In this document: in pieces, positions 19,747-58,175 of the stretch
Layout of the letters: every line of letters starts with the position of its first letter
How positions within the stretch are numbered: position 1 is the stretch's first letter
Assembly: GCA_977020255.1 (NCBI GenBank)
Contig: CDROCS010004111.1
Location: forward strand, 186,001-244,175
DNA from: Obrimoposthia wandeli
Taxonomy: Eukaryota
Direction of reading: 5' to 3'
Length of the DNA: 58,175 nt
Notes under the pieces: model-generated
Databases searched by the model: none
What the model was told of the DNA's origin: nothing
The model's input: the letters and a program-made list of their open reading frames with translations, nothing else
Made by a program: the position numbers and the translations under genes

Positions 19747-20193
19747 TGACAGTATTCGACAGTCCCTACTTTTGAATTTGCCGCTAAAAACTCATAAAAA
19801 TAAATACGTATTATTAAAACAATAAGTTAAAATATTAATTTTAGATATTTTACCATTTATTTGTAAAATCATTTTAAAAAATTTAGAATTTTTGGAATGC
19901 ATTTTAATATGATGATAATATTTTACAATCAAATAGTCATATGCATTTTTATTTATTGTTATTTTTTAATTTATTATTACAATGATTTATGTTATATGTT
20001 AATAATATGTTGTTTTTAATATGTTAATACTATTTAAATATAGAAATTTCATTATTATAATTAAGACTTCCTTTTAAATAAACAATTGAATTATTATATT
20101 AATTTATTGAAATTATTAAAATATCTGACCTATTTTTATTTTTTTCACTTTAAAAAATAAAACAAAATTGTGGACATCGGTCGAATACTGTCA
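19747..20193. mobile_element. MITE-like element with 14-bp terminal inverted repeats
   Basis: TGACAGTATTCGAC (19747-19760) and GTCGAATACTGTCA (20180-20193); AT-rich non-coding interior. Confidence 0.5.
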
Positions 20194-21759: not shown

Positions 21760-22330
21760 TTCTGTAGACGAAGTGTAATATAGTTTTTTTATACAAAATG
21801 GATCATTATGAAAATTCAGTTTATTTAGATCATTGTAAGCCTGATCTATAGATTAGTTACTGCTTTCAAAGAACTATCTTTTTAACTTCAGGAAAATTTT
21901 GAACAAAATTTAAGGCTGTCGTTTACCAACTTTCCCATCTAGTCACTACTACAACAGGAGGATAACCAACATCAAGGAAGACATATTTTTTGTGTTTTAA
22001 TTTTAGTAATTGATGCTTTTATACTTGATATCATATAATTTACATCGAAATAATGAGCTTTTATTCGTAACAAACAATTATTAAATAGGTGCACAATGCA
22101 GTTGACGTAATCAGCAATTTAATTACATCGTCAATAATACTTGTTATTATATTTCCATTAGGTGCAGTTTTAATTACTTTCCAATAGGCAACATACGTCT
22201 TATTAGGTTTTTAAAATTCTCCAATGAAAACCACGACAAAATTATTTCCTGACACTTGGGATTCGTCAATAACTAAAATTATTTCGTCTTCTATTATATT
22301 TTTAATCATATTCTATAATCGCCAATCTAT
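21760..22330 (-). mobile_element. hAT-type transposase remnant
   Basis: Minus-strand YVNCIVHLFN (CxxH motif) and YPPVVVVTRWESW*TTALNF (TRW motif) appear in the expected order. Confidence 0.45.
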
Positions 22331-23160: not shown

Positions 23161-23326
23161 TTGGAAAATGTTTAATGCGTTTTGGTTTGATAAATTTTTT
23201 TATTGTAAAAGTCGCTCAAATTTAAAATATATTTAAATATATATGTAGCTAAAATTAACCACTAATTCATCGATGAATGATTAAAATCTACATATATCAA
23301 TTACTTTTAGTCTTATGTAGACTCAC

Positions 23327-23539
23327 ATTTATAGTAACGGAGCTACTGCGGGGAGGGGTACCCATGTCCCGAGCCACCACAACCACATGGTAGATCCGGG
23401 CGTCTGCAGAGCTGAGTTTCTTGGCCAAACGTAATTCTCCCGTTTTTGGGTCCAAGTAAAACTTCATTTCTGGGTCTCCACGATCGATGTTGTACTGCAC
23501 CGTGGCATTGGGTCCTTCGTCGCGATCGTATGCCCCAAT
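23327..23539 (-). CDS. Protocadherin-like gene, last extracellular cadherin repeat exon
   Basis: Acceptor ccggcag| and donor |gtgagt. 213 nt, phase 0-0. IGAYDRDEGPNATVQY...FYLDPKTGEL...VARDMGTPPRSSSVTIN contains the cadherin AxDxDxGxN and AxDxGxP motifs. Confidence 0.95.
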
Positions 23540-24325
23540 CTGCCGGAAAACAAGTAAGGTTAGGTTACCTTCTTCAAAAAATAGACTCAAATTTACTTAT
23601 CAATTTAGGTATCAATTAAAAGGAAAATAAAAAATGCTTTAGAAAAGGTTTAAAGTTATTTTCCACTTAAAATTGATCAGGCAATTTGGTCAAACTTGCA
23701 AGATTTGAGTGATATGATTTCAATGTAAAGTGGAGAGGAATCTGAGACTGTTAGGCAAAATATTTCATAAACGGATTCTGGAAGTCCACTTTTAATTTAT
23801 AATTTCGTTTCGTCTCTTATATGAATGATCGGCCAAAATCTGTAGTTTTTTAACATCAAATGAAGCACGACAAATGAGTACAAAACCTTTTTTTTGTATA
23901 CCTATATAAAATGAACCAATATAATACTTCAACTACTTTCGATAAAGAAATTAATAAAAAATAAAAACATATAGTATAGGCATACAAACTGTATTTCAAG
24001 AAATACTAGGAATTGAAGTTGTAATACATTTTTAATCACGCTACATAGATTATTTTTTGATACTTACGCAAAGTGAAAACCAAATAAAAATTCAAGTATT
24101 TTTGAATAGTCAATAATATGTTAATACAAATTTTCACTAGGTCCATCATGCAATATTCAGGGGTTCGAATATTCTAATAGCCTTTACATCAATTTCCTCT
24201 GTCTATTCTCGTTTTTAATGTAAAATATTTATCAGTTGCACAATATCAAAAATAAGGTTAATTAAATAAATACTTTTATTGATTAAATTTTTCCATATTT
24301 TTTATTTACCTATAGTTGTCGATAA

Positions 24326-42300: not shown

Positions 42301-45136
42301 TTTCAATTTATTTTTCTCAATAATTTGATGATATTTTGATAAACAAGAACTTATTTCGCCTAACTATTGTTTTTTACCACTTCATCCCAATATAACAATT
42401 TATTTCCTAAAAAATTACAGTTGTGTTTTAATAGTTCATACATTTTGTTTCTTTTAACGGCAATTTTATAGGTATGTTTAAAAAAACTTTCTGTTTACCA
42501 TCTTTCAAACCTTGGGAAATTAAGGGTACTATTTAAACGGGCGAAATAGACTCAAACTGACTTACAGTCTTTCAAAGTCCCCTAACGAGACAGAACAAGA
42601 GGTCGAAGCTAGTCTACTAAACGATAACCGTGTTTACCATAATCACCACTGAGTCATCTGAGCGATTCTTGTCTGCAGAGAACACAACGTATTCTGCAAT
42701 TGTTTCCGCTGCCATCTGGGCAAAATCACGGAAAATGGAATCGAGCGCTTCAACCCAGGTGGGAGGAAGTTGGAGGTTTGACGGCAGATTCCTCTCTGGG
42801 ATTTGCACTTTCGGATACGGTCTGTTTACACAGTGGATTATGCACCTTTTAATTGTTGGACTGTCTGCATCGGTCCCTCGTTCGCTAATTAGGATTCGAG
42901 CTGTTTGTCTGATAAGCTTGTTGCGCTTTTCTGTGTGAGTATTTTGTGTTTAATTTTTGACTGAAATTGACCGTTCATTGTTCTTATTCCGATTGAAACT
43001 TCTAAATCTATACCTGCTCATATACTTTTAAGACAAAAATCATTAAATTATATTTCATTTTATCAGGCACAATTTCAATTTATTTTTTCTTAAAATACGC
43101 ACTTCTTTCAATTGATTCAACACTTTAACATTTTTAACAGAAGGCACCTTTTTTCAGCTCTCGCCAACAAAGACTATACTGAGGGGTTGAAGACCCTTAT
43201 CAACGATGACCGTGAAACTGTGCCTTAATATACGAATCTCGTAGAATTGTTGACAGCTTTTAAAATTTACCAAATGGACAATTTTAGAAAACGGCGCAAC
43301 CAATTTTAATGATTGTTTATTTTATAAAAAAATATAAATTAGAACGTATGAGCAAAATCATAATTTATAACAAACATGCTGAATCAAATTAAGTACCTTA
43401 AAATCATTCTGATAAAATGAGCCTTATCTACCGCTAGGCACTATCAATTTTTTTATGTTTATGAAGAAATCTGAATACCCCCTACTTGATGCAACACATA
43501 TCATGACAATAAAATTCAACTATGCGTAACCAGTTGTTGAATTTCTAAAACCAAGTGGGTCTTTACTAACGACTGTACGACTTCGCTCATTTCAAAAATA
43601 ACAGGAATTTCATCCATATTTCCTATTTGTTCTAAATTGATTTATGTTTTCCGATTATTCACTTTTACTTCTCAGTCATCGAGAAGTTTCAATTCAAAGA
43701 TTGTTATTGGGCTACAATTCAGGGATTTTAATCTCAACTTTCGACAATCTCTTCGCTTTCTATTTAATAATTTTATTCAAACTTTGTAATCTCCTTTTTC
43801 TATTCTTAAATATATTTTTTCAATTCTAGTCAAAGCTTATTTCGATATATTCAGGTGCCTCTCTTTGGATTGAATTGTTGAAGAACTAATCTTGTCCTAC
43901 CATTATTTTCTGTTTAAAATATTTTTTATTGAGATTGTGTATGAATTTATGATTTTAATCATTTGAAATTATTTGTTGTTTTAAAATTTGATTTATTACT
44001 AATTATAAAATTTTAAAATGACCAAAAAATAATTATTAGAAATTAATTAGAAATATTGTGACAAGGTGCGCTTTATTTATCAATGAAGTGTTATATGAAT
44101 TAAATGATTTTTAACGGGTACGCGTTATCAATGTGATTTTAGGTTAAAAATGAAAAGTTAATTGAGGCAACTACTAATTTTCTGTGAACAGTTAATGGTA
44201 CATTTCTCATTGGAAAAAGAGAAATCTAAATTCGAAAGGACATTGATATTTTTGTGGACGATGTCAAAGTGTGTTTTCCTTGAGGAAAAGAGGGAAAACG
44301 AAACGGTAATCCAATGTATGTGGTAGGTTCAACTGTGCTAACATATATCTGACCCTTATTTAAAAATGATGACGTTTTTTGAAATTTGTAGTCATTTTAA
44401 ACAAATTAAATATTAGGAAATTTAATAATAAAATTCAATAAATATTGAGTAGTTATCATCGCAATAATATTTTTTCTTGATCATACAGTATAGGAAGTTT
44501 ATATTAAAACTAAAAATTGTCTAACTTCTTCGAACATTCTTATTTTACTGATCCCTGTGTAAAACCACTGTTAAGGTTGAGAATTAAGAAAATTAAATAT
44601 TTTAGTTGATTAAATACTAAAATAAAAATCCTTGAAAGCAAGGTCGAAAATTGAATTAAAATATTAATTTAAGTTTAGAAGTAAAATTAGTGAAATTTAG
44701 GGTAAATTAGGAGGACCACGAAGGTCGTGTATTATGCGAAAATGTATAAAAGTTAAATTAATTAACCCAAAAGGGACAATTTCAAAAACAAAACTAAAAC
44801 TTAATTAGAAGAAAAACGGTTAATTACAACCGTCGCTCAAGGATCCCCAAGGTAAGCACTTTTGCGTGCAGTAACTAAGATTGTTTTACAGCTGTCATTG
44901 ACTGACAGAATCCAGAATCGCTAGAAGAAATCTACCAGGAACCCCAGAACAGCTGTCAGTTGATTGGCAATCAGGTTCCTATTTAAGAAGAGCCAATTCA
45001 GAAGACAATCACAAATACGGAATCGCTCCAGAGTCGACTGGACGACAATATTGACTTCTAGGTAAGGAGTGTAAGAAGAAATAACAAATTTAAATTATTT
45101 AGGAAATCGATTTTGAATATCTGAACCTATAACCAG

Positions 45137-45494
45137 CCAGCGTATCCAAGAGTCAGCGTATCCAAGAGTCAGCGTATCCAAGAGTCAGCGTATTCAAGAG
45201 TCAGCGTATCCAAGAGTCAGCGTATCCAAGAGTCAGCGTATCAAGAGTCAGCGTATCCAGAGTCAGCGTATTCCAAGAGTCAGCGTATTCAAGAGCCAGC
45301 GTATTGAAGAGTCAGAGTAATCAAGAGTCAGCGTATCCAAGAGTCAGCGTATCCAAGAGTCAGCGTATCCAAGAGTCAGCGTATCCAAGAGTCAGCGTAT
45401 CCAAGAGTCAGCGTATCCAAGAGTCAGCGTATCCAAGAGTCAGCGTATTCAAGAGTCAGCGTATTCAAGAGTCAGCGTATTCAAGAGTCAGCGT
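45137..45494 (+). repeat. 16-bp tandem array (CCAAGAGTCAGCGTAT), ~22 copies, inside the LTR
   Basis: Directly visible; it generates the spurious repetitive ORF 45304-45582. Confidence 0.95.
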
Positions 45495-45587
45495 TCTTCG
45501 GATTCCGCAAATTACCTACGGATCCACATCGGACATCTCGCCGTACCGGAATCAGCGAGTAACTGGTAAGAACACAGACTAGGTTCA

Positions 45588-46024
45588 TTCATTGCCCCTA
45601 GTAGGCAATTAGGATATATTCATTACCCCTAGTTGGTAATTCTATATTTCCTTAATAATACACAAATTCATTGCCCCTAGCTGGTAATTAGGATCACTGC
45701 CTCTTTACCACAATCATTGCCCCTAGTTGGTAATTAGGATCGGACCTTTATTCATTGTCCCCAGCGACAATTAGGAAACTTACCAGACGTTTTTTCCCGT
45801 AAGATTCATTGTCCCTAGCTGGCAATTAGGTTCCTTCATTGCCCCTAGTTGGTAATTCGGATAAATATTCATTGTCCCTAGTAGAAAATTCGGTAAGACT
45901 CATTGTCCACTAGCTGACAATTCGGTTCGCACATTGTCCGTAGTTGACAATTAGGAGTAAGTTTTATTGTCATCTGGACAATTAGGATTTTAGGAGATCC
46001 CTTGTCTACAGTAGACAATTTGGG
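45588..46024 (+). repeat. ~12 spaced copies of an imperfect palindrome TTCATTGYC-(N7-8)-GRYAATTMGG inside the LTR
   Basis: Examples: ttcattgtccctagctggcaattagg, cattgtccactagctgacaattcgg, cattgtccgtagttgacaattagg. Spacers are of variable length. Confidence 0.85.
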
Positions 46025-46507
46025 TCGAACACACAGAGAGTAAGGAACAAAGAAATATTTGGTTAGAGATAAGAAGTAGGAGCGAAGAAATTTAAGAGAG
46101 TTGCGTTATAGATTAACCAACCTGAGTAAGAAGATTAAACCTAGGAAACTTAATCACCTGAACGTAAAATCGATACGTGGTTCATCCCCACTTCTTGTAG
46201 AGACTCACAGAAGTCCTTTAGGAATTTTATCATACTTTTTAGAAATACGTACATAAACGTATTGTGGTGTTAGTTACGTGAATTTTGAATAAACAATTTC
46301 CTACATTAGAACAAGTTGTTTTTACACCCTTCAGACTAAGAGACATCAAAGCAATACCTTCAGATAGTACAAGAGATTAGGCAACCATAACACTAAGTAG
46401 GCCACGACCAACTTTAAGACCTGCTTCTAATCGAACTCACGTTGGGGCCCTCCGCACACTAAGAGGCTCTATACCAAGTTTCGTATAGAAACCCCAACAT
46501 ATTAAAG

Positions 46508-46526
46508 TGGTGCCCCGAGTGAGGAT
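46508..46526 (+). promoter_or_regulatory. Primer binding site, probably elongator tRNA-Met
   Basis: TGGTGCCCCGAGTGAGGAT is complementary to a tRNA 3' end ...ATCCTCAC(T/A)CGGGGCA-CCA, which matches metazoan elongator tRNA-Met as I recall it. Confidence 0.75.
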
Positions 46527-46552
46527 AGCTCATCGGACACAGCGAATTCACG

Positions 46553-47405
46553 TAGAATAAGTTCAGATAAGTTTTGGAAAATTGAGAATAAGTTCAGGTG
46601 AATAGAATAAGTTCAGATAAGTTGCGGATAATTGAGAATAAGTTTCAGGTAAATAGAATAAGTACAGATATTAAGAATAAGTTTCAGATATTGAGAATAA
46701 GTACAGATATTAAGAATAAGTTTCAGATATTAAGAATAAGTTTCAGATATTAAGAATAAGTTTCAGATATTAAGAATAAGTTCAGATATTAAGAATAAGT
46801 TTCAGATAAATTGAGAATAAGTTTCAGATAAATTGAGAATAAGTTTCAGCAGAAGAATATAGACAATTGAGAATAAGTTTCAGAAGAAGATATAAGTAAA
46901 TTGAGTTAAGAATTTGATAAGTGTTAAGAAATCGGGTAGATTTGTTCCTCGAAGTTAAGAATTTGATAAGTGTTGAGAAATCGGGTAGATTTGTTCCTCG
47001 AAGTTAAGAATTTGATAAGTTTTTGAGAAATCGAGTAGATTTGTTCCTCGAAGTTAAGAATTTGATAAGTGTTAAGAAATCGGGTAGATTTGTTCCTCGA
47101 AGTTAAGAATTTGATAAGTGTTGAGAAATCGGGTAGATTTGTTCCTCGAAGTTAAGAATTCGATAAGTTTTTGAAAAGTCGAGTGGATTTGTTCCTCGAG
47201 TCAGTAAATTTTATAAGTGAGAATCGAGTGGATTGATACTCGAAGTAATTAATTGAATAAGTTAAGTCGGGAGACTCTGTCCTCGAACTAATTAAAAAGA
47301 TAAAATCGTAAGTGAATTTGATAAAGTGAGAATCGAGTGGATTGATACTCGAAGTAATTAATTGAATAGGTTAAGTCGGGAGACTCTGTCCTCGAACTAA
47401 TTAAA
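46553..47405 (+). repeat. 5' leader built of three tandem arrays (~20-bp, 49-bp and ~110-bp period)
   Basis: gaataagtttcagatatt units at 46553-46880; gaagttaagaatttgataagtgttaagaaatcgggtagatttgttcctc x~6 at 46903-47198; two copies of gtgagaatcgagtgg...cctcgaactaattaaa at 47217-47405. Confidence 0.9.
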
Positions 47406-47693
47406 GAGATAAAAAGTCGTAAAATAAGAATTGTGAAATAAGCTAAAAATAATAAGTGAATTGATATCGTAAACGAATACATAATTGATAAGACAACGGA
47501 TAATAGAAAAGGACCCGCGTATAATACTAGAAGACAAAGTCAGATCCCCAAGGAAGAGATAAATAATAATAAAGTTAACCGAATTGAACAGGTTCCCCAA
47601 ACAGATAACAAAGTAACAGAAAAGACTAGAGTCGAAGAAAACGTATCAGAAAGAGACGTTGATCAATCAGATGTTTCAACCGGCAGTTTTAAT

Positions 47694-49833
47694 TTGACTG
47701 AATTATTTGGTGACATAGACCAAGAAGAATTTGAAATTGCCAATCCAGTAGTGATTGAGGAAGTTCCATTGAATAATATTGCAGAAATAGTTGAAGACGA
47801 TATAGTTGCAGATATGGCTCAACCAGGAGCTCAAGCAGATATTAATGCAGGAAATAATGTAGGTGACATGAATGCCGAGCAGTTGGCACAAGCTTTAAAT
47901 GCGACGTTGAGACCCAATTTTTCAGGATCATTGCAGATTACAAAGTTTAAAGGAGATGAGGAAAGTATTTGTGACTTCCTCGCAGAATATTCGAGTTGTG
48001 CAGATGTTCAAGGATGGAACGATAAAGAAAAAATGTATCAGAGTACAGGCACATTTAACCGAATTAACACTTGAAGAGTGTAAAGATTTGACAGAAGCAG
48101 AACGTTTGGACTGGCGAGCGTTAGGTACTGCTTTTATTGGAAAATTGGTATTAGGAGATTTAGCCAAAGTAAAATAAGCGACTCATGAGAGAACGGAAAC
48201 AGAAACATGATGAAGGCGTGAATGAATACGCGTATGTTTTGAGAACCTTGGCCGCAAGAGCGTACCCAAGAAGAATAATGAGAAATCAGGACGGTAATCC
48301 TGTAGCTCCAGAAGCACAAGCAGCGGAAAATGACCGGAACCAAAATGAAATGGCAGAGGTCTTGTTAGATATATTTAGAGGAGGATTGAAAAAAGGATAT
48401 TAAAGTGTTATTAGCAGTATCGGATACAAATGATTTTGATAACGCCGTGCGAAAGGCGAGAGAAATTGAGAAAAATATAAAGAATAATGCAGCATTGGCA
48501 ATCTACGCAATGACTGCAGGTGACGACGATAAGACAAAGGTCTTCGTGAATAAAACAGAACCGAGTAATTTTCAGAATCGAAATTATGGACAAAATAAGT
48601 TTGAAAAAGTAGATGAATCCAGTAACGGAAACAGAGATAATTTCCGAAGTAGGAATCGAGATGATTCGAGAGGTAGAAATAATAGTGAGTCTTGGAACAG
48701 GAATCGAGATGATTCAAGAGGTAGAAATAATAATGATTCGTGGAATAGAAATAGAGATGATTCCAGGAATAGATTTAATAGAATAATTCAGGAAATCGCC
48801 AACCTTGGAGAGGAGACGATAGGAATTATAACGCAAACAGAGGAGAACAAGTGACTCTCGATTTGGAAATAATGCAGGAAATAGTGACGGAAGATTCAAT
48901 AATCGAGGAAGCGGTTTTGAATCGAATTTCCGAAGAAATGATTTTAGAGGACGCTATGATAATAGACAGAATAGTCGTCGAGTACAGTTCGAAGATGAAC
49001 AAAATAAAATAGATATTCGAGGGAGAATAATGTGTTACACATGTAAACAAATGGGTCACTATTCGAGAGATTGTACGAGAAGTAAAGAGTTCGGAGCTAA
49101 CAGATTTGGAAATAATTATAGAGGATATAATTCACCTCCGCCATGGAATAGAGGTGGTGGATATACTCCACAGCCATGGAGACTGAATAATCAGTATGCA
49201 GATAGACAGCAAGGAGCTGAGAGATACAATAATTACGTAGGACAGCAAGGAGCTGAGAGATATAATAATTCTGGTAGATATAATAATAATAATGTCGACA
49301 AGACAAATAGTCGAGAGAGTTCGCCGAAACCGAAAGGAAATTTTAGTTATGTAAGCGATGACAGTGATAGGAATCGCGAGACCGAGCTTCGACGCGAAAT
49401 AGATTTTGAAGATAGTGATAGTAAATTTGAACGAATGTTGGGAATAATTAAAGATTCACCACATACAAAGATGGCGAATTCATCTACGTTGTCGAAACAA
49501 GAGAGAAGTCTACATTCGAGAGGAGAGATGAATGATTTAATGAATAGAATATTAGAAGCGTATGAGACACCAATAGAGAAAACGTGTAACGCACAACCTA
49601 TGACTGATCATGTAGAAGCAGCAAGAAATGCTACGAGTATGGAAAATGTAAAAAAGATAATTAGTGAAGCTAAGGAAACGCTGAATCAACCGTTAGATGA
49701 AACAGTGAAGCTCCAGAAGTTTTGGCCAAATTGCAAACAATTAAAGTGCACCGATTGGAAGAAGTACGTGCAGAATTGGTTAAACATAGTCATGATAACT
49801 TGGGTTACAAAGAAGTACCCCGAGGACTACTGA
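47694..49833 (+). pseudogene. gag: gag (capsid, low-complexity R/N/D linker, CCHC zinc knuckle), frameshifted
   Basis: ITKFKGDEESICDFLAEY...GWNDKEK and RKQKHDEGVNEYAYVLRTLAARAY are Gypsy gag-like. Zinc knuckle CYTCKQMGHYSRDC at 49033-49074. About 6 frame disruptions. Confidence 0.85.
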
Positions 49834-49877
49834 GAGGTTATGGTCGTTATGTACAGAGATCAAACCAAAAAGGAACG

Positions 49878-50108
49878 ATGAAAATTTCACTTCGATTAAT
49901 TTCCGGACAGATAATACATGAAAAACTTAACGTGTATCAAACAATGAAAACGATTCGGAAAAAGTTAGCCGAGAAACTTGAAATTGATGGAATGAATATG
50001 TTGTTCCATTATAAAGGCAGATCACTAGATGATGAGGACGTACCAGTCGAGTTTGGATATCCGATAGGAAATGAATTAGAGGAAAAAATTGATGTCATCA
50101 CTGTAGGA
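49878..50108 (+). other. Ubiquitin/SUMO-like domain
   Basis: MKISLRLISGQIIHEKLNVYQTMKTIRKKLAEKLEIDGMNMLFHYKGRSLDDEDVPVEFGY aligns without gaps to ubiquitin [61 protein letters not shown]. Confidence 0.7.
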
Positions 50109-52841
50109 CGTCAAGAGTTAGTAGATAATGAAGGATTAACCGAGATATTGAATTCTGCGTTAGAAATGATAAAAACGCCTATAGAAATTTTAGACAGTTC
50201 AAGCGAAAGCGGAGATAATGATGTAGCTGAAGTTTGGAACAAGACATCCACACCAGAACCGTACGTAGCTGAATTACAAGACATGAATTTAGAAAATGAG
50301 TTGACAACTCCAGTGGTTGAGGTGCCACCAGAACCAGATATAATTCCAATCAGACAAGATGAAGTCACGGATACAGCCAACCAAGTGAGACAAAACGAAA
50401 CCGTAACACAACTAGTAGGAGAAGACGAAGTCTCCGAGATTGTAGATTTGGATTCACCAATTTGGCATGCCGCATACAAAGATAGACAAGCAGAGCAAAT
50501 GATGCGACAAAATGAAGAGATTGGCCATGAAGAAGGACCAAGTCAAGAGATACAGTATAATGGTGAAACGTATGATCCAGGAGAGAATCAAACTGAGTAT
50601 CAGTATTTTCGAAGAGGGCCTGGAAGACCTAGAAAAGGTGAAAGTATATTACGAAATGTTCTAACTGCACCACAAACTGATGAAGAAAGACATCTAAGTA
50701 TTGGACAGTTAGCGGCGTCATTAGAGCAGTATAGTGCAGAGAGGAATGAAGATATCAGAGGTGATATGAATTCGGAAACTCCAAGTAGTAAAGATATACT
50801 TACGGGAATTCTCAGGCAAGTGAAGCCGAAGTTGTTCAAAATGTACAGAACGGGAATTCTCAGGCAAGTGAAGCCGAAGTTGTTCAAAATGTACAGAGAT
50901 GAAACAACCGATATAACAGACAATTTGACTAAAGCAGTCAGATCACAGATGTCTGCAGTAAAGAGAATGACCGCGAATCATGTATACCATGCATCGATAG
51001 ATAGATTTTATGACGGTGAAGTTTTAGCGAGATTATGTGGAAACCAGACTACAAATAAAAAGTTAATTACAGCGATCACATATCTATGTTTCCAATTGAC
51101 GGAACGAACGAGCCAACCTCACGAAGTCAAACAAGGAATAAATGAAGCGATGTATTTGATCGAGAATGTATTACAGAGACGAATTGACGAAAATGGAGGT
51201 TGGGCAAAATTAAGTGACTACGCTAAAACCATTGTGGAAATTAATGAAGACGATGACGAACAATGTCATGAGAATCGTCAAAAGGAAAATAAACAATACC
51301 GTCCGAAAGAGAGAAACAATCAACCAAATATGTCCACAACAATGATGATGATGATGTTAGTAATGTTTATGGGAATGCAACAGGCATCAGGATTGATAGC
51401 ATATGACTGTAGCATACCAAAGATGGGACAAAAGTATTCACTGCTTGACAGCGAAGACTGTCCAGAATCACAACCGTCAAAACTAGAAGTTCAAGGTGTT
51501 GAAAACTACTTTGTGTATCAGGATGTTGATAAAGTACAAGTAGAAGTGAAAGAATGTTCAATCCATTCAAGTTATCACGAATTCTATTGTGGTCATAGAA
51601 GTTTTATGTCAGAAATCACACCTACCACACCGTACAAGGCACATAAGGTTTTGCCGAGAGATTGCGAAGATGCATTTCGAACGGGAACGATAGGAGGTAG
51701 ACAAAATTACAAACCTGAAGTACAAATTGGAGTGAGACGATACGAAACAGTCACGAGAGTCGGACAGCGATGGGCTGATGGATCTTGTGACGGAGAAACA
51801 AAAAACGTGCGTGGAACCAAAGTATCTGAGTTAGTAATGGATGTAACTTACAAAATCGAATTAAAAACATGGACCGCCAATTTTGATAAAAAGACACAAC
51901 TAATGATGAAGTATCCAGAATGTAAAATGACAGATGCATCTTGTTTTACAGGTGAATCCACAATTGTGTACAACATAAATCCGAAGCAATGCTCTTTAGT
52001 ATTTTTGAAAGAGATTAGCTTTAATAAAATAAAAGGATTCCTGTATAATAAAGATGGAGAGGGGTTCCTGTATAATAAAGCAGGAAAAGGATTGTTAAAT
52101 GAAACAAGACCAATCCCAATGACAAAAACACCTACACTGTTAATGGCAACATCAATAGAAGAAGGATTGATATTTATTAAAAAGAGAAACAAAGCGCGAT
52201 GCGGAATGACTGTTAGTACCACAAACTATCCAGGAATAGTTTTGTCCAAAACAATAGCATTGGCAGAAACCAAGCTAAAACCAAAAGATATGCAGCTACA
52301 CACGTATTTTAATAATAAAATTGATTTCTATTATCATAAAGGATTGATGCAAATGGAACAGTTATATCGGATGATGATTGAAAGAGATTGCCAGTTAAAC
52401 AAAGAGATCGTGAGAACAAAGTTAGCATTAGCTATTACGAATCCAGACATGGTAGCACCATTATTACCCTTGGATGAAGGAGTATTTGCTAAAACCATGG
52501 GAGAAGTATTGTATACTTACAAGTGTAATAAAGTAGAGGTACAGTTGAGAAAAACAAATCGATGTACGAGTGAATTGGCAGTAACGTATAATTTACAAGA
52601 ACTTTTTGTTGAACCAATCACGAGAATGTTACTTCCAAAAGACACCCCAACTAAAGAAATCAGCTGCTCTAATATAATGGCACCTGAATATCAAATGACG
52701 AATAATCTATGGATAACGTTACCTGATCGAAAGCCAACGAAAACCCCAGCGATGATAAGAATGACGAATCTTAAAGGTAAAATGAAATTCCAAGCGGTGG
52801 AAAATATGGAGAACGCAGGATTGTACAATGAAAAGATTTAA
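49878..52841 (+). CDS. Intact 987-aa ORF: ubiquitin-like domain - AT-hook - Bcl-2-like domain - signal peptide - chuvirus-type glycoprotein ectodomain
   Basis: The first in-frame ATG is at 49878 (the frame is open from 49722). No stop until 52839-52841. Confidence 0.85.
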   Translation: MKISLRLISGQIIHEKLNVYQTMKTIRKKLAEKLEIDGMNMLFHYKGRSLDDEDVPVEFGYPIGNELEEKIDVITVGRQELVDNEGLTEILNSALEMIKTPIEILDSSSESGDNDVAEVWNKTSTPEPYVAELQDMNLENELTTPVVEVPPEPDIIPIRQDEVTDTANQVRQNETVTQLVGEDEVSEIVDLDSPIWHAAYKDRQAEQMMRQNEEIGHEEGPSQEIQYNGETYDPGENQTEYQYFRRGPGRPRKGESILRNVLTAPQTDEERHLSIGQLAASLEQYSAERNEDIRGDMNSETPSSKDILTGILRQVKPKLFKMYRTGILRQVKPKLFKMYRDETTDITDNLTKAVRSQMSAVKRMTANHVYHASIDRFYDGEVLARLCGNQTTNKKLITAITYLCFQLTERTSQPHEVKQGINEAMYLIENVLQRRIDENGGWAKLSDYAKTIVEINEDDDEQCHENRQKENKQYRPKERNNQPNMSTTMMMMMLVMFMGMQQASGLIAYDCSIPKMGQKYSLLDSEDCPESQPSKLEVQGVENYFVYQDVDKVQVEVKECSIHSSYHEFYCGHRSFMSEITPTTPYKAHKVLPRDCEDAFRTGTIGGRQNYKPEVQIGVRRYETVTRVGQRWADGSCDGETKNVRGTKVSELVMDVTYKIELKTWTANFDKKTQLMMKYPECKMTDASCFTGESTIVYNINPKQCSLVFLKEISFNKIKGFLYNKDGEGFLYNKAGKGLLNETRPIPMTKTPTLLMATSIEEGLIFIKKRNKARCGMTVSTTNYPGIVLSKTIALAETKLKPKDMQLHTYFNNKIDFYYHKGLMQMEQLYRMMIERDCQLNKEIVRTKLALAITNPDMVAPLLPLDEGVFAKTMGEVLYTYKCNKVEVQLRKTNRCTSELAVTYNLQELFVEPITRMLLPKDTPTKEISCSNIMAPEYQMTNNLWITLPDRKPTKTPAMIRMTNLKGKMKFQAVENMENAGLYNEKI
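50610..50639 (+). other. AT-hook motif
   Basis: RRGPGRPRKG (GRP core flanked by basic residues). Confidence 0.7.
50790..51230 (+). other. Bcl-2-like helical domain
   Basis: BH2-like LQRRIDENGGWAKLSDY (NGGW at 51192-51203; cf. Bcl-xL WIQENGGWDTFVELY, Bax WIQDQGGWDGLLSYF). BH1-position helix NKKLITAITYLCFQL at ~51054-51098. Confidence 0.6.
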
Positions 52842-53238
52842 AGCGGCGTGGAACGAAATAATGTTTCCAGTAAGAAGAGCCAGAGTACTTACGGAGATGG
52901 TACATCGAGCATTACCGCCAGGAGCGAGATATGCAATTTCGATATGTTATTATCGCCAAGTCATTTCAAGGAAGCAGCATCAGACACTTAGAAAGATGTG
53001 GAAATTCCTTGTCTTAGGACAACTATTTTCGGGTATCATAGGTATTTATGTTATAATTAAATTTGTGCAGGTAATTATAGCCCAGGTGTTGTCTACGTAT
53101 AGTTTATACAGGATAACCGGAATCACCTGGCAACTTATAATTGGATGTTTTCCATTTTTAGCAAAATATCTAATGCACCATCATCACGAGAACGAGTTGC
53201 GAGCCCTCAAGAAGAACAACACCAAACGAGAACCATGA
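51330..53238 (+). other. env: Chuvirus-type envelope glycoprotein; TM tail frameshifted after ~52835
   Basis: Signal peptide MSTTMMMMMLVMFMGMQQASG, then LIAYDC...SLLDSEDC, YCGHRS, LHTYFNNK, QLY...DC.L, NPD, GEVLYTYKC..V.V..R.T..C..EL.V and F.EP.TR. The hydrophobic WKFLVLGQLFSGIIGIYVIIKF segment is in the 52828-53238 frame. Confidence 0.8.
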
Positions 53239-53537
53239 TGAGAGAACCAAGAAACTATCGAGACGACAACGACGACGATAATGATAGTCCAGAAGTATAT
53301 GCAAAGATACCAGGAAAACCAAAGATTCCGTTACCAGACAAGGAAGAAGTGGCGTTAAACCTATACCCAATGAAGGAATTGAAGGAAGAAAAGGAAAAGT
53401 TCAAGAGAGGCATCTTAATGATAAGATGGCCTAAAGTGAGCTACAGTGAAATTCCACAAGCAGAGGAAAAAGACAAAAAAGATAATTCCAGAAGAATTCT
53501 GAAATCTAGGATATCAAATGAGAATCCAAATGCTCCA

Positions 53538-53822
53538 CCACAAGTAGCAGTAACATTGAACGGAAGAGAATATCTTGCCGAAGTTGATACCGGATCTGCA
53601 GTATCAGTACTGAGTAAAGAAATCTTGTCATCAAAGAATTAAGAGAAGTATGTCCTAGAAAACAGACATTTGTTAACGTGAATGGTACAGATGTAGTGTC
53701 GGAAGGAACACTGAAATGTTCATTGAATATCGATGGAAGAGTATTACAGTTAAATGCTAGAATATTCACAGATTGCGGTAGTCCAGTCATGATTGGGATG
53801 GACGTAATACAGTGTTTGAAGG
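53538..53822 (+). pseudogene. pro: Retroviral-type aspartic protease, copy 1 (frameshift ~53640)
   Basis: VTLNGREYLAEVDTGSAVSVL (DTG at 53586-53594); after the shift ...VNVNGTDVVSEG...SPVMIGMDVI. Confidence 0.85.
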
Positions 53823-54066
53823 AATAATTATACTACCAAACAACAAGAGTTATAAGAATGATAGTTCAGTGAGAGAGATAAAAATGTTGAGAGGACCTAT
53901 AGTCGAAAAGGAAAAAGGCACTACGTTCCGTATGGGAAGTTCGTACCCAGACAGAAAACAGGAAGCGCTAGCAAAGTCGATACTTCACTACAAAAATGTA
54001 AATTTCGGACCACAAGATACGACGAGGAGAAAAATAACATATGTAAATCTGTCAGAAAGGGATCCC

Positions 54067-55099
54067 ATGAGATTCGAGAGAAAGAGGCGAAATATATTAG
54101 AACAGTACTATTCAAAAGGAATGGCACGTAAAATGGCAAGATCAGGTTTAGAAATGCTAAACGCGACAAAGTAGTTATGGTCAGGAGATAGTAGTACGAT
54201 GCGTATGTGGTGTAGAGTAAAGTTTAGAGAATGGGAACAGAATGAAAACCCAATGAGACGTCATAAAAGAGATGCACCAAATTGTCCATTTCTTTTGAAA
54301 CTGAAAAACGTCAAACGTACCAGAAGTCAAACAGGAAAAGCACCCGATTTCGATTACAGTGACGGGGGTAATTCCGAAAGGAGAATCAGCTCTAATAACA
54401 GGTAGAGTAATAACGAATAGTCAGAATTGAAGATATATTCGAAGTTATGCGAAGTGAAACGAATGTGACGAACAGTATCGAGAAGTAACTTTCGAAGATC
54501 CAAGACTTAAAAAATTGGCAAAAAGGGACTTTTGCTATAAAAAGGATGGTAAAGACGTAATTAAATGCCACAAGTGTAAAAAAGAACGAATTATCGACAG
54601 ATATACTCTTGAGCTACCTAAGAAAATTTTACATCATGAATTTTGCGAATTTTGTACTTGTAAAAACAAAATAAAGCAAAAAAGAACAGAAAACCGAATG
54701 TATAATCGAATACCAAATCACACGGAAAGAGATTTTGGCTCAACAAGACACACCGGTAGTGTCATTCGTGAAAGGTTATATCCAAAAGAAGCAGAAAGAA
54801 TCAGAGAATTGGTAGAATTAAAAATAAAAACTACGCGAAACGGATACGGATCGATTTTGAATTACTGCGAGATAAAGATGACAGTACAATTGAAACAAAA
54901 GAAAAGTACATAAATGAACTAGAATACGTACTAGAAGATCCGGAATGCGCAGTTTGCATGGTTAACAAAATAGAAGTTGCCTTTCTACCATGCGGACATG
55001 TAAGAACATGTCGGAGATGTGCGAATGAAATGGTATCATGTCCGATTTGTCGAAAGAATAATAGATCGACAAGTGAGAAACATTAGATTTCACTATCCA
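54067..55099 (+). pseudogene. iap: IAP module BIR1 - BIR2(degenerate) - UBA-like - RING embedded in the pol polyprotein
   Basis: BIR1 (54067-54294) gives C-V-W-C-x16-H-x6-CPFL after repairing a frameshift at ~54205. BIR2-like LAKRDFCY...DVIKCHKC at ~54515-54650. UBA-like LVELKIKTTRNGYGSI. Complete IAP-type RING CAVCMVNKIEVAFLPCGHVRTCRRCANEMVSCPICR (54946-55053), missed by the ORF track. Confidence 0.92.
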
Positions 55100-55180
55100 A
55101 ACACAGGAAGTGGACTGACAGAGTGTAATAATTCGATAAATACAATATACCATATGGGAAACATAAATGGAGCACAGCGA

Positions 55181-55473
55181 CCAGCAGCTATCATTAGAGT
55201 AAATAATTTAAGAGTAAAAAAGCCTTAATTGATACAGGTGCTGTAGCTTCGATAGTAAGTGAAGACTGTTTGACAGAGGAACAGAAACGAACAATGGCAG
55301 AACCAGATGAATTCTTGGTATCGGTCAATGGAGACCCTGTAAAAGTGACAGGAATATTACCATGTACATTTATAATTGGACGTAATACGATCACTATACC
55401 AGTTAGAATCATGAAAGAATGTCCTGAACCTACAATTTTAGGAATGGATGTATTATCACAACTCAAGGGATAA
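55181..55473 (+). pseudogene. pro: Retroviral-type aspartic protease, copy 2 (frameshift ~55220)
   Basis: PAAIIRVNNLRV.ALIDTGAVASIV (DTG at 55231-55239)...VSVNGDPVKVTG...PTILGMDVL. Confidence 0.9.
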
Positions 55474-55959
55474 GTATTGATTTACAAGATCAAGATTGAA
55501 GGATAGCACATCAAACAGACAAATAAACCAAATTGATGTAATTATAGAGAATCCTATAAAAATCGGTAAAAGATCACAATTTCTCATTCAAGGCCACACG
55601 TTATCAGAAGATAAAGGACCAGTTGTGTTCGAACCATCACGAGATTTCATAGAGAAATACGAATTACCAGTTTGTGAGTACATATGCCTGATCGAAAATC
55701 ATAAAATACCAGTTAGACTGATGAATACAACCAACAATGACATTCTATTATACAGAGGAATGAGGTTGGGAAAGATAGCACAGATGGAGAATTCCACTGT
55801 ATGCGCTATGAAACTCGATAAAGATACGAATGATTACGAAGAAATAGTAATCCAACCAGAAAAAAACAATTACTCGATCTAATACATAAATTTCCAAAAG
55901 TAATTGCAAAATCCATATGACATAGGAGAAACACTGTCATAAAACATACAATACCACTG

Positions 55960-56830
55960 ACAGAAGACAAAGTAGTCAGAAGAAGACCATATCAGTACCA
56001 TTACAATTACAAGATGAAGTAAAAAGTCAGATAGAAGATATGTCTAAAACAGGAGTAATTAGACCGAGTTTTCGCCATTTTCAGCACCTGTGGTGTTGGT
56101 AAAAAAGAAGGATGGGAAAATGAGATTCTGTATAGATTTCCAGAGAACTAGACAGATCACAAGAAAAGATGTGTATCCATTACCTAGAATCGAAGAGATG
56201 CTCGATAAATTGGGTAATTCAGATTATTTACAACATTAGATTTGCAGAGTGGATACTGGCAAATCGAGATAGAAGGAAGAGGATAAACACAAGACAGCCT
56301 TTTCCTTCGGAGATGGATTATACGACTGCGAAAAGATGCCATTCGGACTGACAGGAGCTCCAGCAACATTTCAGCGTTGCATGAATTTTGTACTCGCATC
56401 GTGTGCAAACACGATGGTTTATATCGATGACATAATAATATTTTCGAAAACGTTCGAAGAACATTTAAAAATCTCGAAGTTGTATTTAAAAAGGCTGGAA
56501 AAACGCTAAATTAAAGTTAAACCTACAAAATGCGTATGGGCTAAAGAGCGAGTAACATTTTTAGGACATATAGTATCGAAGAGGCATTCGACCTGATCCA
56601 GCAAAGATCGAAAGTAAAAGCGCATTTAGCACCAAAGACTGTTAAGGAGATACAGAGTTTTTTAGGTCTTGCAGAATTATATAGACGATTTGTTGAACAT
56701 TTTTCAGATATAGCAACACCATTGAGAAAGTTGACGAGAAAAGATGAGAAGTTCATATGGGGAGAAGAAGCCCAACAAGCGTTCGAGCATTTAAAAGAAA
56801 GACTGATAAAAGCACCAATATTGAACCCAG
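55960..56830 (+). pseudogene. pol: Reverse transcriptase, frameshifted
   Basis: SPFSAPVVLVKKKDGKMRFCIDF, YPLPRIEE, LDLQSGYWQI, MPFGLTGAPATFQR, YIDD (56420-56431), FLGHIV, FLGLAELYRRFV. Confidence 0.95.
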
Positions 56831-56844
56831 ATATAAACAACAAT

Positions 56845-57200
56845 TCATACTCATGACAGATGCAAGTAACTATGTGAACAGTATTGGGACAAGAGGATGA
56901 CGAAGAAGAACACATTGCGTATGCGAGTAGAGGATTAAACAGGCCGAAAGAGGATACTCTGTTATCGAAAAGGAATGTCTGGCAAGATGTATTATGTGAA
57001 CAGTACAAACACTATTTGCTAGGACAAAAAGTATTCCTGTATACAGATCACAAACCACTACGAGTTCTTGTATAAACATAGAGATGAGATGAGTAGATTA
57101 AACAGATGGTTTCTAAAATTGGCCGAATTCGATCTAGAAATCCGTTATAGAAGAACCGGAAAGTCGAACGGCAACGCAGATTGTTTATCGAGATTGACAA
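56845..57200 (+). pseudogene. RNase H (Ty3-type), frameshifted
   Basis: MTDAS, IAYASRGL, YLLGQKVFLYTDHKPL, RW...LAEFD..I.Y...GKSNGNADCLSR. Confidence 0.92.
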
Positions 57201-57489
57201 ATGTAGACGAGAAAGGAAACATAATTCCAGAAGAAGATGAAACCAATGACCAAAAAAGGAGAAGCAAATCTACTGACGATTTTGTTAAAGACGGGTAAAA
57301 TAGACAAAGAGATCATCAAAGAACAGAAGAAGATGAAGAACTGAGTCTAATCAAAAAATTGTTGGTGAAAAGGAGATCTAAACGATGAAATGACGAAGAA
57401 ATCTCGATAAAAGAGGCATCTGTATATTGTCAATAATGTCGAGAAGATAGTAGTAGTAATTCCAGTCATTGAAAACAGCAGTGATGATC

Positions 57490-58175
57490 CAGTATCACGA
57501 CGGAACACTAGGAGGACATCGTCAGGGCGAAAGACAATAGCCAGAATCAAAGAGAAGTACCGTGGGATGGTATGGAAGACGACATAAAACAATGGTGTAA
57601 ACAATGTAAAGTATGTTTAACCAGAAAAGACACCGGAACTCGTACTAAAGTTCCGTTGAAACCAATACCAGTTCCTTTGGCACCAATGGAATTCACAGCG
57701 ATGGATATATTGGGACCATTAGAGAATCAAGTAAAGAGCAAGTATGTCGCGTAGTATTTACGGATTACATGACGAGATGGGTAGAAGCATATCCCATGCA
57801 GAACCAAGCTGAAACAATAGCGCAAATCTTAGTGGAAGATAATATTTCGATGCAGGTGCCTAGAAAATTGTTAACGGATCAAGGTAAGAACTTCACTGGA
57901 GAAGTCATAAAAGCAGTATCGAAGATATTCGGAATCATGAAGTTACAAACTTCACCATATCACCCACAGACAGATGGTCTGGTGGAAAGGTTTAATAAAA
58001 CTTTATGTATGATGGTACAATCCTATTGCTCATACAAGCAAGAGGATTGGGATAAATGACCTTCATGTTTATATGCTTACAGGAATTCAGTTCGAGAGGC
58101 GACAGGTCACACACCATTCTATCTGATGTATCTCGGGCAGAACAATATGCCGATGGACAGCAATGCCGTGGCTTA
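57490..58175 (+). pseudogene. int: Integrase (HHCC + rve core), truncated by the window end
   Basis: HDGTLGGH...CKQC; MDILGPL; DYMTRWVEAYP; LTDQGKNF; SPYHPQTDGLVERFNKTL. Confidence 0.95.

What the first reader, a model, noticed from the sequence alone, without database searches (positions are those of the whole stretch)
44569..58175. Giant Gypsy retroelement that looks like an enveloped virus with a dual anti-apoptosis kit
Seen directly, on one strand and apparently once one polyprotein: gag(CCHC) - UBL - AT-hook - Bcl-2-like - signal peptide + chuvirus-type glycoprotein - protease - BIR/BIR/UBA/RING - protease - RT - RNase H - integrase. About 6 kb of cargo sits between gag and RT. Known env-bearing LTR elements (errantiviruses, Tas, Cer, chuvirus-G-bearing BEL/Pao elements) normally carry env after pol. 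Combining Bcl-2 and IAP inhibitors is a strategy of large DNA viruses. Inference: an infectious retroelement lineage that blocks both mitochondrial and caspase steps of cell death in the cells it replicates in. From memory (unverified), giant planarian Burro-type Gypsy elements were reported to carry an anti-apoptotic gene, so compare with those. I know of no report of this full combination.
Basis: partly seen in the sequence, partly recalled or inferred. Interest (0 to 1): 0.95.

Follow-up and report, generated by a model that had tools for sequence, protein, structure and literature searches.

The report
Decayed Burro-like env-bearing Gypsy retroelement
This is a broken, window-truncated copy of an already described kind of giant retrovirus-like element (planarian "Burro" type) that carries a viral envelope gene and cell-death-regulator domains inside its polyprotein: real and curious, but not new.

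Summary
Tool-significant: gag zinc knuckle, a Monjiviricetes-type fusion glycoprotein (Pfam E 1.6e-64), one BIR, an IAP-type RING, RT, RNase H and integrase (best solved match: Ty3 RT). Supported only weakly or by relatives: ubiquitin-like domain, AT-hook, Bcl-2-like domain, both proteases, a second BIR. There is no support for a UBA.

Intact natural relatives found by protein search carry gag, glycoprotein, protease(s), RT, RNase H and integrase in one ORF. So "once one polyprotein, env between gag and pol" is sound.

This copy is dead. It needs at least 35 stops or frame changes outside one 1039-codon open frame, and the window cuts it inside integrase.

The combination is already published for planarian Burro/GYPSM1 elements (Arkhipova and Yushenova 2019, PMC6431247): gag, ubiquitin/SUMO-like, BCL2-like, in-frame env, protease, RT, RNase H, integrase, plus BIR. 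The claim of no prior report therefore fails.

Particular to this copy are a BIR+RING module between two protease copies and the unexplained intactness of the cargo-plus-glycoprotein frame (P about 2e-4).

Infectivity and anti-apoptotic action remain untested inference. I fetched no DNA of relatives.

The parts
44564..44568 (.). Host bases next to the 5' end; candidate half of a target-site duplication
   Evidence: Read. It cannot be verified because the 3' end of the element lies outside the window.
44569..46499 (+). Inferred 5' LTR (about 1.93 kb, TGTT...AACA termini). It holds a 16-nt x 22 array (45138-45494) and about ten copies of a ~24-nt motif with an internal palindrome (45580-46020).
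   Evidence: The start is set by the change in composition and the sequence. The end is inferred from the ...AACA terminus 8 nt before a primer-binding-like site. Repeat arrays. No second LTR is in the window, so the bounds are not proven.
46508..46525 (+). Primer-binding-site-like 18-mer beginning TGG
   Evidence: Read. The window holds no tRNA gene to compare it with. Inference.
46553..47414 (+). Untranslated leader with tandem arrays (periods 20, 49 and 109 nt)
47694..49833 (+). gag, broken (at least 4 interruptions, plus 1 frame change at the junction with the next ORF). The zinc knuckle is at 49033-49077. The start is approximate.
   Evidence: zf-CCHC, E 2.9e-6. Pieces match the N-terminal regions of P0001, P0006 and P0007. 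Counts.
49722..52838 (+). The only long open frame (1039 codons, no interruption): ubiquitin-like, acidic linker, AT-hook, Bcl-2-like, signal-like segment, most of the glycoprotein ectodomain
49878..50111 (+). Ubiquitin-like domain; it begins at the first Met of the open frame
   Evidence: Pfam ubiquitin, E 0.035. PDB profile hit to ubiquitin variants, E 0.008. 36% identical to the ubiquitin-like region of P0001, E 1.5e-5, which itself hits Pfam ubiquitin at E 0.0046. Homologous regions occur in P0004 and P0005.
50613..50636 (+). AT-hook-like basic motif with a G-R-P core, after a 165-residue acidic linker (40 D/E, 7 K/R)
   Evidence: The same motif lies upstream of the glycoprotein in P0002. 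Motif-level only.
50709..51329 (+). All-helical Bcl-2-like region (the Pfam-matched core is 51015-51203). It contains an exact in-frame 48-nt tandem duplication at 50802-50897.
   Evidence: Pfam Bcl-2, E 0.12, profile positions 35-100. It is homologous to P0003 31-115 and P0001 913-988, E about 5e-7. P0003 hits the same Pfam positions, E 0.2. BCL-2 and Bcl-xL chains score E 2-3 at the C-terminal motif. The AlphaFold models are helical but of low confidence. Duplication.
51330..53235 (+). Envelope gene, broken once (1 frame change): signal-like hydrophobic segment 51330-51392, Monjiviricetes-type fusion glycoprotein ectodomain, transmembrane segment about 52999-53106, short tail
   Evidence: Pfam PF24664, E 1.6e-64 and 5.7e-17. 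35-42% identical over the full length to P0002-P0008. Hydropathy. Count.
53400..53824 (+). Retropepsin-like protease 1, broken (at least 2 interruptions); bounds approximate
   Evidence: Asp_protease_2, E 0.017. An active-site-like triplet is visible in the piece listed. It matches the proteases of P0002, P0005, P0007 and P0008.
54040..55083 (+). IAP-like module, broken (at least 6 interruptions): BIR 1 (Pfam-matched part 54208-54294), weak BIR 2 (54491-54586), RING (54961-55065)
   Evidence: BIR, E 1.7e-6, and zf-C3HC4_3, E 7.4e-11. 81 IAP-family PDB chains. BIR 2, E 0.12. No UBA. No match in relatives P0001-P0009. Same composition as the rest of the element, and no flanking repeats.
55150..55470 (+). 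Retropepsin-like protease 2, broken (counted together with the next part: at least 4 interruptions); bounds approximate
   Evidence: BLASTP to the proteases of P0007 (E 3e-6), P0003, P0005, P0002 and P0008. No Pfam hit.
55496..55879 (+). Conserved domain between protease and RT. This is the position where the literature reports a dUTPase-like domain in Burro.
   Evidence: Matches P0007 1404-1472 and P0008 2343-2398, E about 5e-11. No Pfam hit. The dUTPase statement comes from PMC6431247 and was not tested here.
56080..56730 (+). Reverse transcriptase, broken (at least 7 interruptions); bounds approximate
   Evidence: RVT_1, E 3.4e-11. 64-71% identical to P0007 and P0008. Ty3 RT is the best solved match. 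Count.
56734..57295 (+). RNase H, broken (at least 2 interruptions)
   Evidence: RT_RNaseH, E 1.4e-7. Matches P0007 and P0008.
57455..58175 (+). Integrase (zinc-binding and core domains), broken (at least 5 interruptions) and cut by the end of the window
   Evidence: Integrase_H2C2, E 0.0025, and rve, E 3.1e-5. 55-68% identical to P0007, P0008 and P0009.

Best explanation
The region is a dead copy of a Burro-like Ty3/Gypsy LTR retroelement in an AT-rich animal genome. The window cuts it at its 3' side.

What live relatives look like (shown). One giant reading frame encodes gag, a variable slot of host-derived domains, a captured fusion glycoprotein of negative-strand-RNA-virus type, one or more proteases with further modules between them, and then RT, RNase H and integrase. 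In this copy the slot holds a ubiquitin-like domain, an AT-hook and a Bcl-2-like domain. The module between its two proteases is an IAP-like BIR plus RING.

How such a polyprotein would work (inferred).
- The N-terminal gag and cargo stay in the cytosol.
- The internal hydrophobic signal takes the chain to the ER, and the glycoprotein ectodomain is translocated.
- The transmembrane segment stops transfer, so the proteases and pol come back to the cytosolic side.
- Signal peptidase and the element's own proteases then cut the pieces apart.
- After signal cleavage, the signal segment could serve as a C-terminal membrane anchor for the Bcl-2-like domain.
- The Bcl-2-like and IAP-like pieces would delay death of the cell that produces particles.

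This copy can do none of that. Every gene outside one 1039-codon frame is broken.
For: Single-ORF architecture in natural relatives:
- P0007: gag, G, PR, RT, RH, IN (2694 aa).
- P0005: CCHC, ubiquitin-like, G, 3-4 PR.
- P0004: gag, ubiquitin-like, G, PR.
- P0003: Bcl-2-like, signal, G, PR, PR.
- P0001: gag, CCHC, ubiquitin-like, Bcl-2-like.
- P0008 (4844 aa): G, 7 PR stretches with ankyrin repeats between them, RT, RH, IN.

The window's pieces are collinear with P0007 and P0008. Identity is 64-71% for RT, 55-68% for IN and 35-42% for G.

The literature describes the same set and order for Burro/GYPSM1, including in-frame env between gag and pol, BCL2-like, Ubi2/SUMO-like, BIR and tandem repeats (PMC6431247).

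Composition is uniform across the cargo, and no repeats flank the IAP module.

Against: - Identity with the named Burro families was not tested. No reference sequence was available to me, and the host species is not established (only a cadherin exon and 72% A+T).
- MATH/TRAF, ankyrin and Smc-like domains reported for Burro1 were not found here.
- The visible part points to an element of at least about 16 kb, not the >30 kb of Burro1. The 3' end is unseen.
- The Bcl-2 assignment stays below every significance threshold, and two structure predictions failed.
- The IAP module has no counterpart in the nine relatives, so it could be private to this copy.
- The membrane topology, the processing and any anti-apoptotic effect are inference only.
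Confidence: 0.8

Rival explanations
1. The one intact frame (ubiquitin-like, Bcl-2-like, truncated secreted glycoprotein) is kept open because the host now uses it. This would be a co-opted element gene, as with truncated env genes that act as restriction factors or with captured death regulators. The rest of the copy decays around it.
For: There is no interruption in 3117 nt, against at least 35 in the remaining 7.5 kb. The chance of such a gap under uniform placement is about 2e-4. The first Met of the frame coincides with the start of the ubiquitin-like domain.
Against: - The frame ends through a frame change before the transmembrane segment.
- It lies behind about 3 kb of broken gag, with no promoter of its own seen.
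- A recent conversion tract from a live copy, or an assembly mosaic of copies, explains the pattern equally well.
- There are no data on expression or orthologues.
- The only substitution-level test I could run had no power.
Confidence: 0.08
2. The series is a composite. Separate insertions (a glycoprotein-bearing virus fragment, a host IAP retrocopy, a second element supplying the second protease) are nested in an ordinary Gypsy element, or repeats were misassembled.
For: The IAP pieces match none of the nine relatives. There are two protease copies. The 3' LTR is unseen.
Against: - Relatives join glycoprotein, proteases and pol in single natural ORFs.
- Several protease copies with foreign modules between them are a family trait: 7 stretches and ankyrin repeats in P0008, 2-4 stretches in P0002-P0005.
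- The cargo has the same strand and the same A-rich composition as the rest of the element.
- No flanking direct or inverted repeats were found.
- Ubiquitin-like, Bcl-2-like and glycoprotein share one uninterrupted frame.
Confidence: 0.07
3. The glycoprotein is a stand-alone endogenous fragment of a chuvirus-like RNA virus that happens to lie inside retroelement debris.
For: The Pfam family is one of negative-strand RNA virus glycoproteins. Such fragments are common in arthropod genomes (PMC7642597, PMC10084718).
Against: - It shares a frame with the upstream cargo and lies between gag and protease, exactly as in seven relatives.
- No nucleoprotein or polymerase remnants of an RNA virus were seen.
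- No named exogenous virus came back from the protein searches.
Confidence: 0.02

Closest known systems
Burro / GYPSM1 giant Gypsy-like LTR retroelements of planarians (Jurka 2007; Grohme et al. 2018; Arkhipova and Yushenova 2019, PMC6431247)
   Same: - gag with CCHC.
- A ubiquitin/SUMO-like domain upstream of a BCL2-like domain.
- env in frame between gag and pol, with homology to mononegavirus-type fusion glycoproteins.
- PR, a further domain between PR and RT, then RT, RH and IN.
- A BIR domain.
- Tandem-repeat arrays.
- An AT-rich host.
- Relative P0008 has a 4844-aa ORF with ankyrin repeats, close to the 4873-aa ORF1 described.
   Different: - No MATH/TRAF, ankyrin or Smc-like domain was found in this copy.
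- Only one zinc knuckle was detected.
- The visible gag-to-integrase span is about 10.7 kb, against about 14.6 kb of ORF1.
- Here the BIR comes with an IAP-type RING and lies between two protease copies; the text I could read does not say this of Burro.
- Sequence identity to the named families was not tested.
Errantiviruses (Drosophila gypsy, ZAM and others) and other env-bearing LTR elements
   Same: A Ty3/Gypsy-type pol together with an envelope gene captured from another virus.
   Different: In those elements env is a separate ORF after pol, is expressed from a spliced RNA, and is of baculovirus F type (PMC12440569). Here env is of a different family and sits inside the polyprotein before the protease.
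Anakin-type BEL/Pao elements of mosquitoes with a captured chuvirus glycoprotein (Dezordi et al. 2020, PMC7642597)
   Same: An LTR element that captured a glycoprotein of the Jingchuvirales/Mononegavirales kind.
   Different: Different retroelement family (BEL/Pao), different hosts (arthropods), and no death-regulator cargo reported. I made no sequence comparison with it.
Large DNA viruses that encode both a Bcl-2 homologue and an IAP homologue (for example African swine fever virus; baculoviruses for IAP). From general knowledge, not tested here.
   Same: The same pairing of two classes of cell-death regulators in one mobile genome.
   Different: Those are separate genes of DNA viruses. Here they are domains of a retroelement polyprotein, and their activity is unknown.
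Polyproteins with internal signal sequences (flavivirus and pestivirus type). From general knowledge.
   Same: What it would work like: an internal signal and a stop-transfer segment thread one chain across the ER membrane, and signal peptidase plus a viral protease release the parts.
   Different: No homology. The topology here is inferred from hydropathy and domain order only.

Membership tests
Ty3/Gypsy (Metaviridae) LTR retroelements | pol order PR, RT, RNase H, integrase, with Ty3-like RT | tested here: met
   Order of the Pfam hits. The RT piece best matches Ty3 RT 4ol8 (E 8.6e-8) and Ty3 Gag-Pol 7q5b.
Ty3/Gypsy (Metaviridae) LTR retroelements | Two LTRs with TG...CA ends, a target-site duplication, a primer-binding site and a polypurine tract | tested here: inconclusive
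   Only the 5' side is in the window. TGTT...AACA termini and a TGG-initiated 18-mer were inferred. The 3' LTR, polypurine tract and duplication are out of reach.
Burro-like giant Gypsy elements | Envelope gene in frame between gag and pol, homologous to mononegavirus-type fusion glycoproteins | tested here: met
   PF24664, E 1.6e-64, lies in the same frame as the upstream cargo. Single ORFs in relatives P0005 and P0007.
Burro-like giant Gypsy elements | Ubiquitin/SUMO-like domain followed by a BCL2-like domain upstream of env | tested here: inconclusive
   Position and order fit. Ubiquitin: E 0.035 (Pfam) and 0.008 (PDB profile). Bcl-2: E 0.12, with a concordant E 0.2 in homologue P0003. All are below the curated cut-offs.
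Burro-like giant Gypsy elements | BIR domain in the polyprotein | tested here: met
   BIR, E 1.7e-6, above the cut-off. IAP-family PDB hits.
Burro-like giant Gypsy elements | MATH/TRAF, ankyrin and Smc-like domains (variable between the described members) | tested here: not met
   No such Pfam hit in any open piece. Ankyrin is present in relative P0008.
Burro-like giant Gypsy elements | Total length above 30 kb, internal region up to 25 kb | not testable with these tools
   The window ends inside integrase. The visible part is 13.6 kb. P0008 has about 1550 aa after integrase, so the size of this element is open.
Burro-like giant Gypsy elements | Sequence relationship to the named Burro1-4/GYPSM1 references; planarian host | not tested
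   No reference sequence is in the tools. I left out fetching DNA of relatives. Host evidence is limited to composition and a cadherin exon.
IAP family | At least one BIR domain, with a C-terminal RING in the E3-type members | tested here: met
   BIR and zf-C3HC4_3 are both above the cut-off and in that order. The gene is broken at least 6 times.
Bcl-2 family | Pfam Bcl-2 domain above the gathering score, or a Bcl-2 fold | tested here: inconclusive
   13.4 bits against a cut-off of 31.4. The models have pLDDT 43 and 41, too poor for a fold search. Support comes from the concordant weak hits and from the literature on Burro-2, -3 and -4.
Errantivirus-type env-bearing Gypsy elements | env as a separate ORF downstream of pol | tested here: not met
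   env lies upstream of the protease.

The most novel reading that the evidence does not exclude
The uninterrupted 1039-codon frame (ubiquitin-like, AT-hook, Bcl-2-like, secreted truncated glycoprotein) in an otherwise decayed copy is under host constraint. That would make it a co-opted retroelement gene combining a death regulator with an envelope fragment.
Probability: 0.07. Interest if true: 0.6.

Novelty: new member of a known kind. Interest (0 to 1): 0.3.

Why it matters
The kind is remarkable: a retroelement that places a captured RNA-virus envelope gene and host cell-death regulators inside its polyprotein. That bears on how retroviruses arise from transposons and on how mobile elements handle host cell death.

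It has been in print since 2007-2019, however, so this copy adds little. It offers:
- one more (dead) member;
- evidence that the slot between gag and env, and the spaces between repeated proteases, are places where different host modules have been taken up in different lineages;
- one odd, unexplained open frame.

Tried and rejected
- A word-indexed protein search with the cargo half of the open frame found nothing at 571-1818 aa.
- The exhaustive phmmer search of 1.84 billion representatives with the same 560 residues gave a single hit, P0001. The cargo domains have no close cellular relatives detectable by sequence.
- AlphaFold of the Bcl-2-like region failed, both alone and with its one alignable homologue (pLDDT 43 and 41). 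I ran no fold search, since it would be meaningless.
- The alignment tool misplaced P0001 in three-sequence alignments, so I could not hand in a three-member profile of the Bcl-2-like domain.
- PDB sequence searches with the pieces claimed as second BIR/UBA and as the first half of BIR 1 gave nothing.
- Rfam and tRNA scans of the window were empty.
- No other copy or fragment of the element is in the window.
- The test of conserved-position retention (G 67%, pol 70%) cannot resolve the 3-4% decay implied by the break density. I give it no weight.
- Grohme et al. 2018 is not held in the library.
- I rejected nested insertion, a stand-alone viral fragment and misassembly as main explanations; the reasons are given under the rivals.

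Full report
**What is there**

From 44569 to the end of the window the + strand changes character. GC rises from 0.21-0.33 to 0.34-0.39, and the strand becomes A- and G-rich (AT skew up to +0.29). No part of the region recurs elsewhere in the window.

The region opens with TGTT. About 1.93 kb further on, an ...AACA is followed after 8 nt by an 18-mer beginning TGG that looks like a primer-binding site. I take 44569-46499 as the 5' LTR, but the second LTR is outside the window, so this is inference.

The LTR and the leader are full of tandem arrays:
- 16 nt x 22;
- about ten copies of a palindrome-containing ~24-nt motif;
- arrays of 20, 49 and 109 nt.

**Domains in order**

Each stop-free piece was searched on its own.

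| Feature | Evidence |
|---|---|
| gag pieces | Match the N-termini of relatives |
| Zinc knuckle | E 2.9e-6 |
| Open frame 49722-52838 (1039 codons) | Uninterrupted |
| Continuation of the glycoprotein, with the transmembrane segment | One frame change away; E 5.7e-17 |
| Protease 1 | Pfam E 0.017; an active-site-like triplet is visible |
| BIR | E 1.7e-6; 81 IAP-family PDB chains |
| Possible second BIR | E 0.12 |
| IAP-type RING | E 7.4e-11 |
| Protease 2 | Matches relatives' proteases, E down to 3e-6 |
| Conserved PR-RT spacer domain | E about 5e-11 to P0007 and P0008 |
| RT | E 3.4e-11; Ty3 RT is the best solved match |
| RNase H | E 1.4e-7 |
| Integrase | Below the Pfam cut-off, but 55-68% identical to relatives; cut by the window end |

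The open frame itself reads, in order:
- a ubiquitin-like domain that begins at its first Met (Pfam E 0.035; PDB profile E 0.008);
- a strongly acidic linker;
- an AT-hook-like motif;
- an all-helical Bcl-2-like region;
- a hydrophobic signal-like segment;
- most of a Monjiviricetes-type fusion glycoprotein (E 1.6e-64).

I found no support for a UBA domain.

**The Bcl-2 claim**

The Bcl-2 claim is the weakest part of the headline.
- Pfam gives only E 0.12, on profile positions 35-100.
- The region is homologous to the corresponding regions of two relatives (E about 5e-7), which match each other at E 1e-25.
- One of them, P0003, is only about 26% identical to the window, yet it independently gives a weak Pfam Bcl-2 hit in the same register (E 0.2, positions 36-100).
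- Profile searches of the PDB return BCL-2 and Bcl-xL at the C-terminal motif, at E 2-3.
- Two structure predictions were too poor to use.

Together with the published BCL2-like motif at the same place in Burro-2, -3 and -4, I rate the assignment likely but not shown.

**Relatives**

I obtained relatives by protein search only; all are unnamed ENA or JGI contigs.

| Relative | Length (aa) | Content of the ORF |
|---|---|---|
| P0001 | 997 | gag, CCHC, ubiquitin-like, Bcl-2-like |
| P0003 | 1582 | Bcl-2-like, signal, G, two proteases |
| P0002 | 1299 | AT-hook, signal, G, two proteases |
| P0004 | 2099 | gag, ubiquitin-like region, G, several proteases |
| P0005 | 2296 | CCHC, ubiquitin-like region, G, several proteases |
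| P0006 | 1352 | gag, G, start of a protease |
| P0007 | 2694 | gag, G, protease, RT, RNase H, integrase in one ORF |
| P0008 | 4844 | G, seven protease-like stretches with ankyrin repeats between them, RT, RNase H, integrase, then about 1550 further residues |

P0008 is a cluster mate of P0002. The window's pieces are collinear with P0007 and P0008 (RT 64-71% identity).

Three conclusions follow:
- Repeated proteases with foreign modules between them are a family trait.
- The cargo differs between lineages. The Bcl-2-like domain is detectable in two of the relatives, the ubiquitin-like region in three, and the IAP module in none.

**State of this copy**

A frame-aware lower bound shows that reading the 10.7-kb coding part needs at least 35 interruptions. 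One optimal path has 13 stops and 22 frame changes. Shuffled sequence needs about 147.

| Gene | Interruptions (lower bound) |
|---|---|
| gag | at least 4, plus 1 frame change at its junction with the next frame |
| Ubiquitin-like, AT-hook, Bcl-2-like | 0 |
| Glycoprotein | 1 frame change |
| Protease 1 | at least 2 |
| IAP module | at least 6, including an in-frame stop within the first BIR |
| Protease 2 plus spacer domain | at least 4 |
| RT | at least 7 |
| RNase H | at least 2 |
| Integrase | at least 5 up to the window end |

The split between stops and frameshifts per gene is not unique. The copy is dead.

**An unexplained point**

With 35 breaks placed uniformly, a 3.1-kb gap has a probability of about 2e-4. 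Host constraint, a recent conversion tract from a live copy, or an assembly mosaic would each explain it. I could not discriminate between them, and the one substitution-level test I ran lacks power. The frame also contains an exact in-frame 48-nt tandem duplication.

**How it most likely works**

This is inference for live family members, not for this copy.
- One polyprotein is made.
- gag and the cargo stay cytosolic.
- The internal signal directs the glycoprotein ectodomain into the ER.
- The transmembrane segment returns the chain to the cytosol for the proteases and pol.
- Signal peptidase and the element's proteases separate the parts.

The signal segment could then anchor the Bcl-2-like domain in the membrane. 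The protease copies flanking the IAP module would release it. The death regulators would prolong the life of the producing cell.

Shown: domain identities, domain order and single-ORF status in relatives. Not shown: topology, processing, any effect on cell death, particles, and transfer between cells.

**Comparison with what is known**

Arkhipova and Yushenova 2019 (PMC6431247) summarise Jurka 2007 and Grohme et al. 2018, and add their own HHpred analysis of Burro/GYPSM1 elements of Schmidtea mediterranea and of a Dugesia tigrina relative. They report:
- gag with two or three CCHC knuckles;
- MATH/TRAF;
- a Ubi2/SUMO-like domain;
- a BCL2-like domain;
- protease, a dUTPase-like domain, RT, RNase H and integrase;
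- BIR and ankyrin repeats, and tandem repeats.

They also state the provirus hypothesis and the idea of meddling with apoptosis and ubiquitination. BURRO1 is transcribed and under PIWI control in planarians (PMC8532177). Planarian genomes are more than 70% A/T (PMC11410931), as is this window's host DNA.

The finding is therefore a member, or a close relative, of a known kind. Its differences are the missing MATH, ankyrin and Smc-like domains, an apparently smaller size, and a BIR+RING module between two proteases. Whether it belongs to one of the named Burro families I could not test.

- I fetched no DNA of the relatives' contigs and did not extend the window by look-up.
- For the same reason I ran no scan of the viral or metagenome contig collections with the glycoprotein.
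- P0008 and P0009 came from a cluster look-up of P0002. I used them only for a domain scan and for pairwise scores.
- Slip: in my reasoning I compared several pieces with short signatures of cellular families recalled from memory. These were the zinc-ligand spacing of BIR, the BH1/BH2 signature, the ubiquitin C-terminus, the retropepsin triplet and a dUTPase motif.
- Slip: the script printed a longer block of the natural sequences of P0003 and P0001 than I intended. Nothing in it was altered or joined.

Noticed in passing
window 49722-52838: This is the only uninterrupted frame in a copy with at least 35 breaks elsewhere. A gap this long has P about 2e-4 under uniform placement. Its first Met coincides with the start of the ubiquitin-like domain.
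   Followed up: partly
window 50802-50897: An exact (100%) in-frame tandem duplication of 48 nt (16 codons) lies at the N-terminal side of the Bcl-2-like region.
   Followed up: no
window 45138-45494 and 45580-46020: Inside the inferred LTR there is a 16-nt unit repeated 22 times, and about ten dispersed copies of a ~24-nt motif containing a 6-bp palindrome. These may be repeated binding sites.
   Followed up: no
window 46553-47414: The leader between the primer-binding-like site and gag consists almost entirely of tandem arrays of 20, 49 and 109 nt.
   Followed up: no
window 48603-48773: A 24/48-nt tandem array within gag encodes an R/N/D/S-rich low-complexity stretch.
   Followed up: no
window 23300-23590 (-): Cadherin-domain exon (Pfam E 1e-17). 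The host is an animal, and the element lies about 21 kb from this exon.
   Followed up: partly
window 8964-9401 (+) and 10330-10662 (+): An integrase-core-like ORF (rve_3, E 0.0013, below the cut-off) and a nearby 111-aa ORF with no Pfam hit. Probably the remnant of another mobile element.
   Followed up: no
window 1-2000 and 18001-22000: Blocks of extreme A+T content (GC 0.21) in the host part.
   Followed up: no
relative P0008 (protein only): A 4844-aa ORF with seven protease-like stretches, ankyrin repeats between them, and about 1550 residues after integrase with no Pfam hit.
   Followed up: partly
relatives P0001-P0007 (proteins only): The slot between gag and the glycoprotein signal varies from about 270 to about 800 residues and holds different content in different relatives. 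A ubiquitin-like region occurs in three and a Bcl-2-like region in two.
   Followed up: partly
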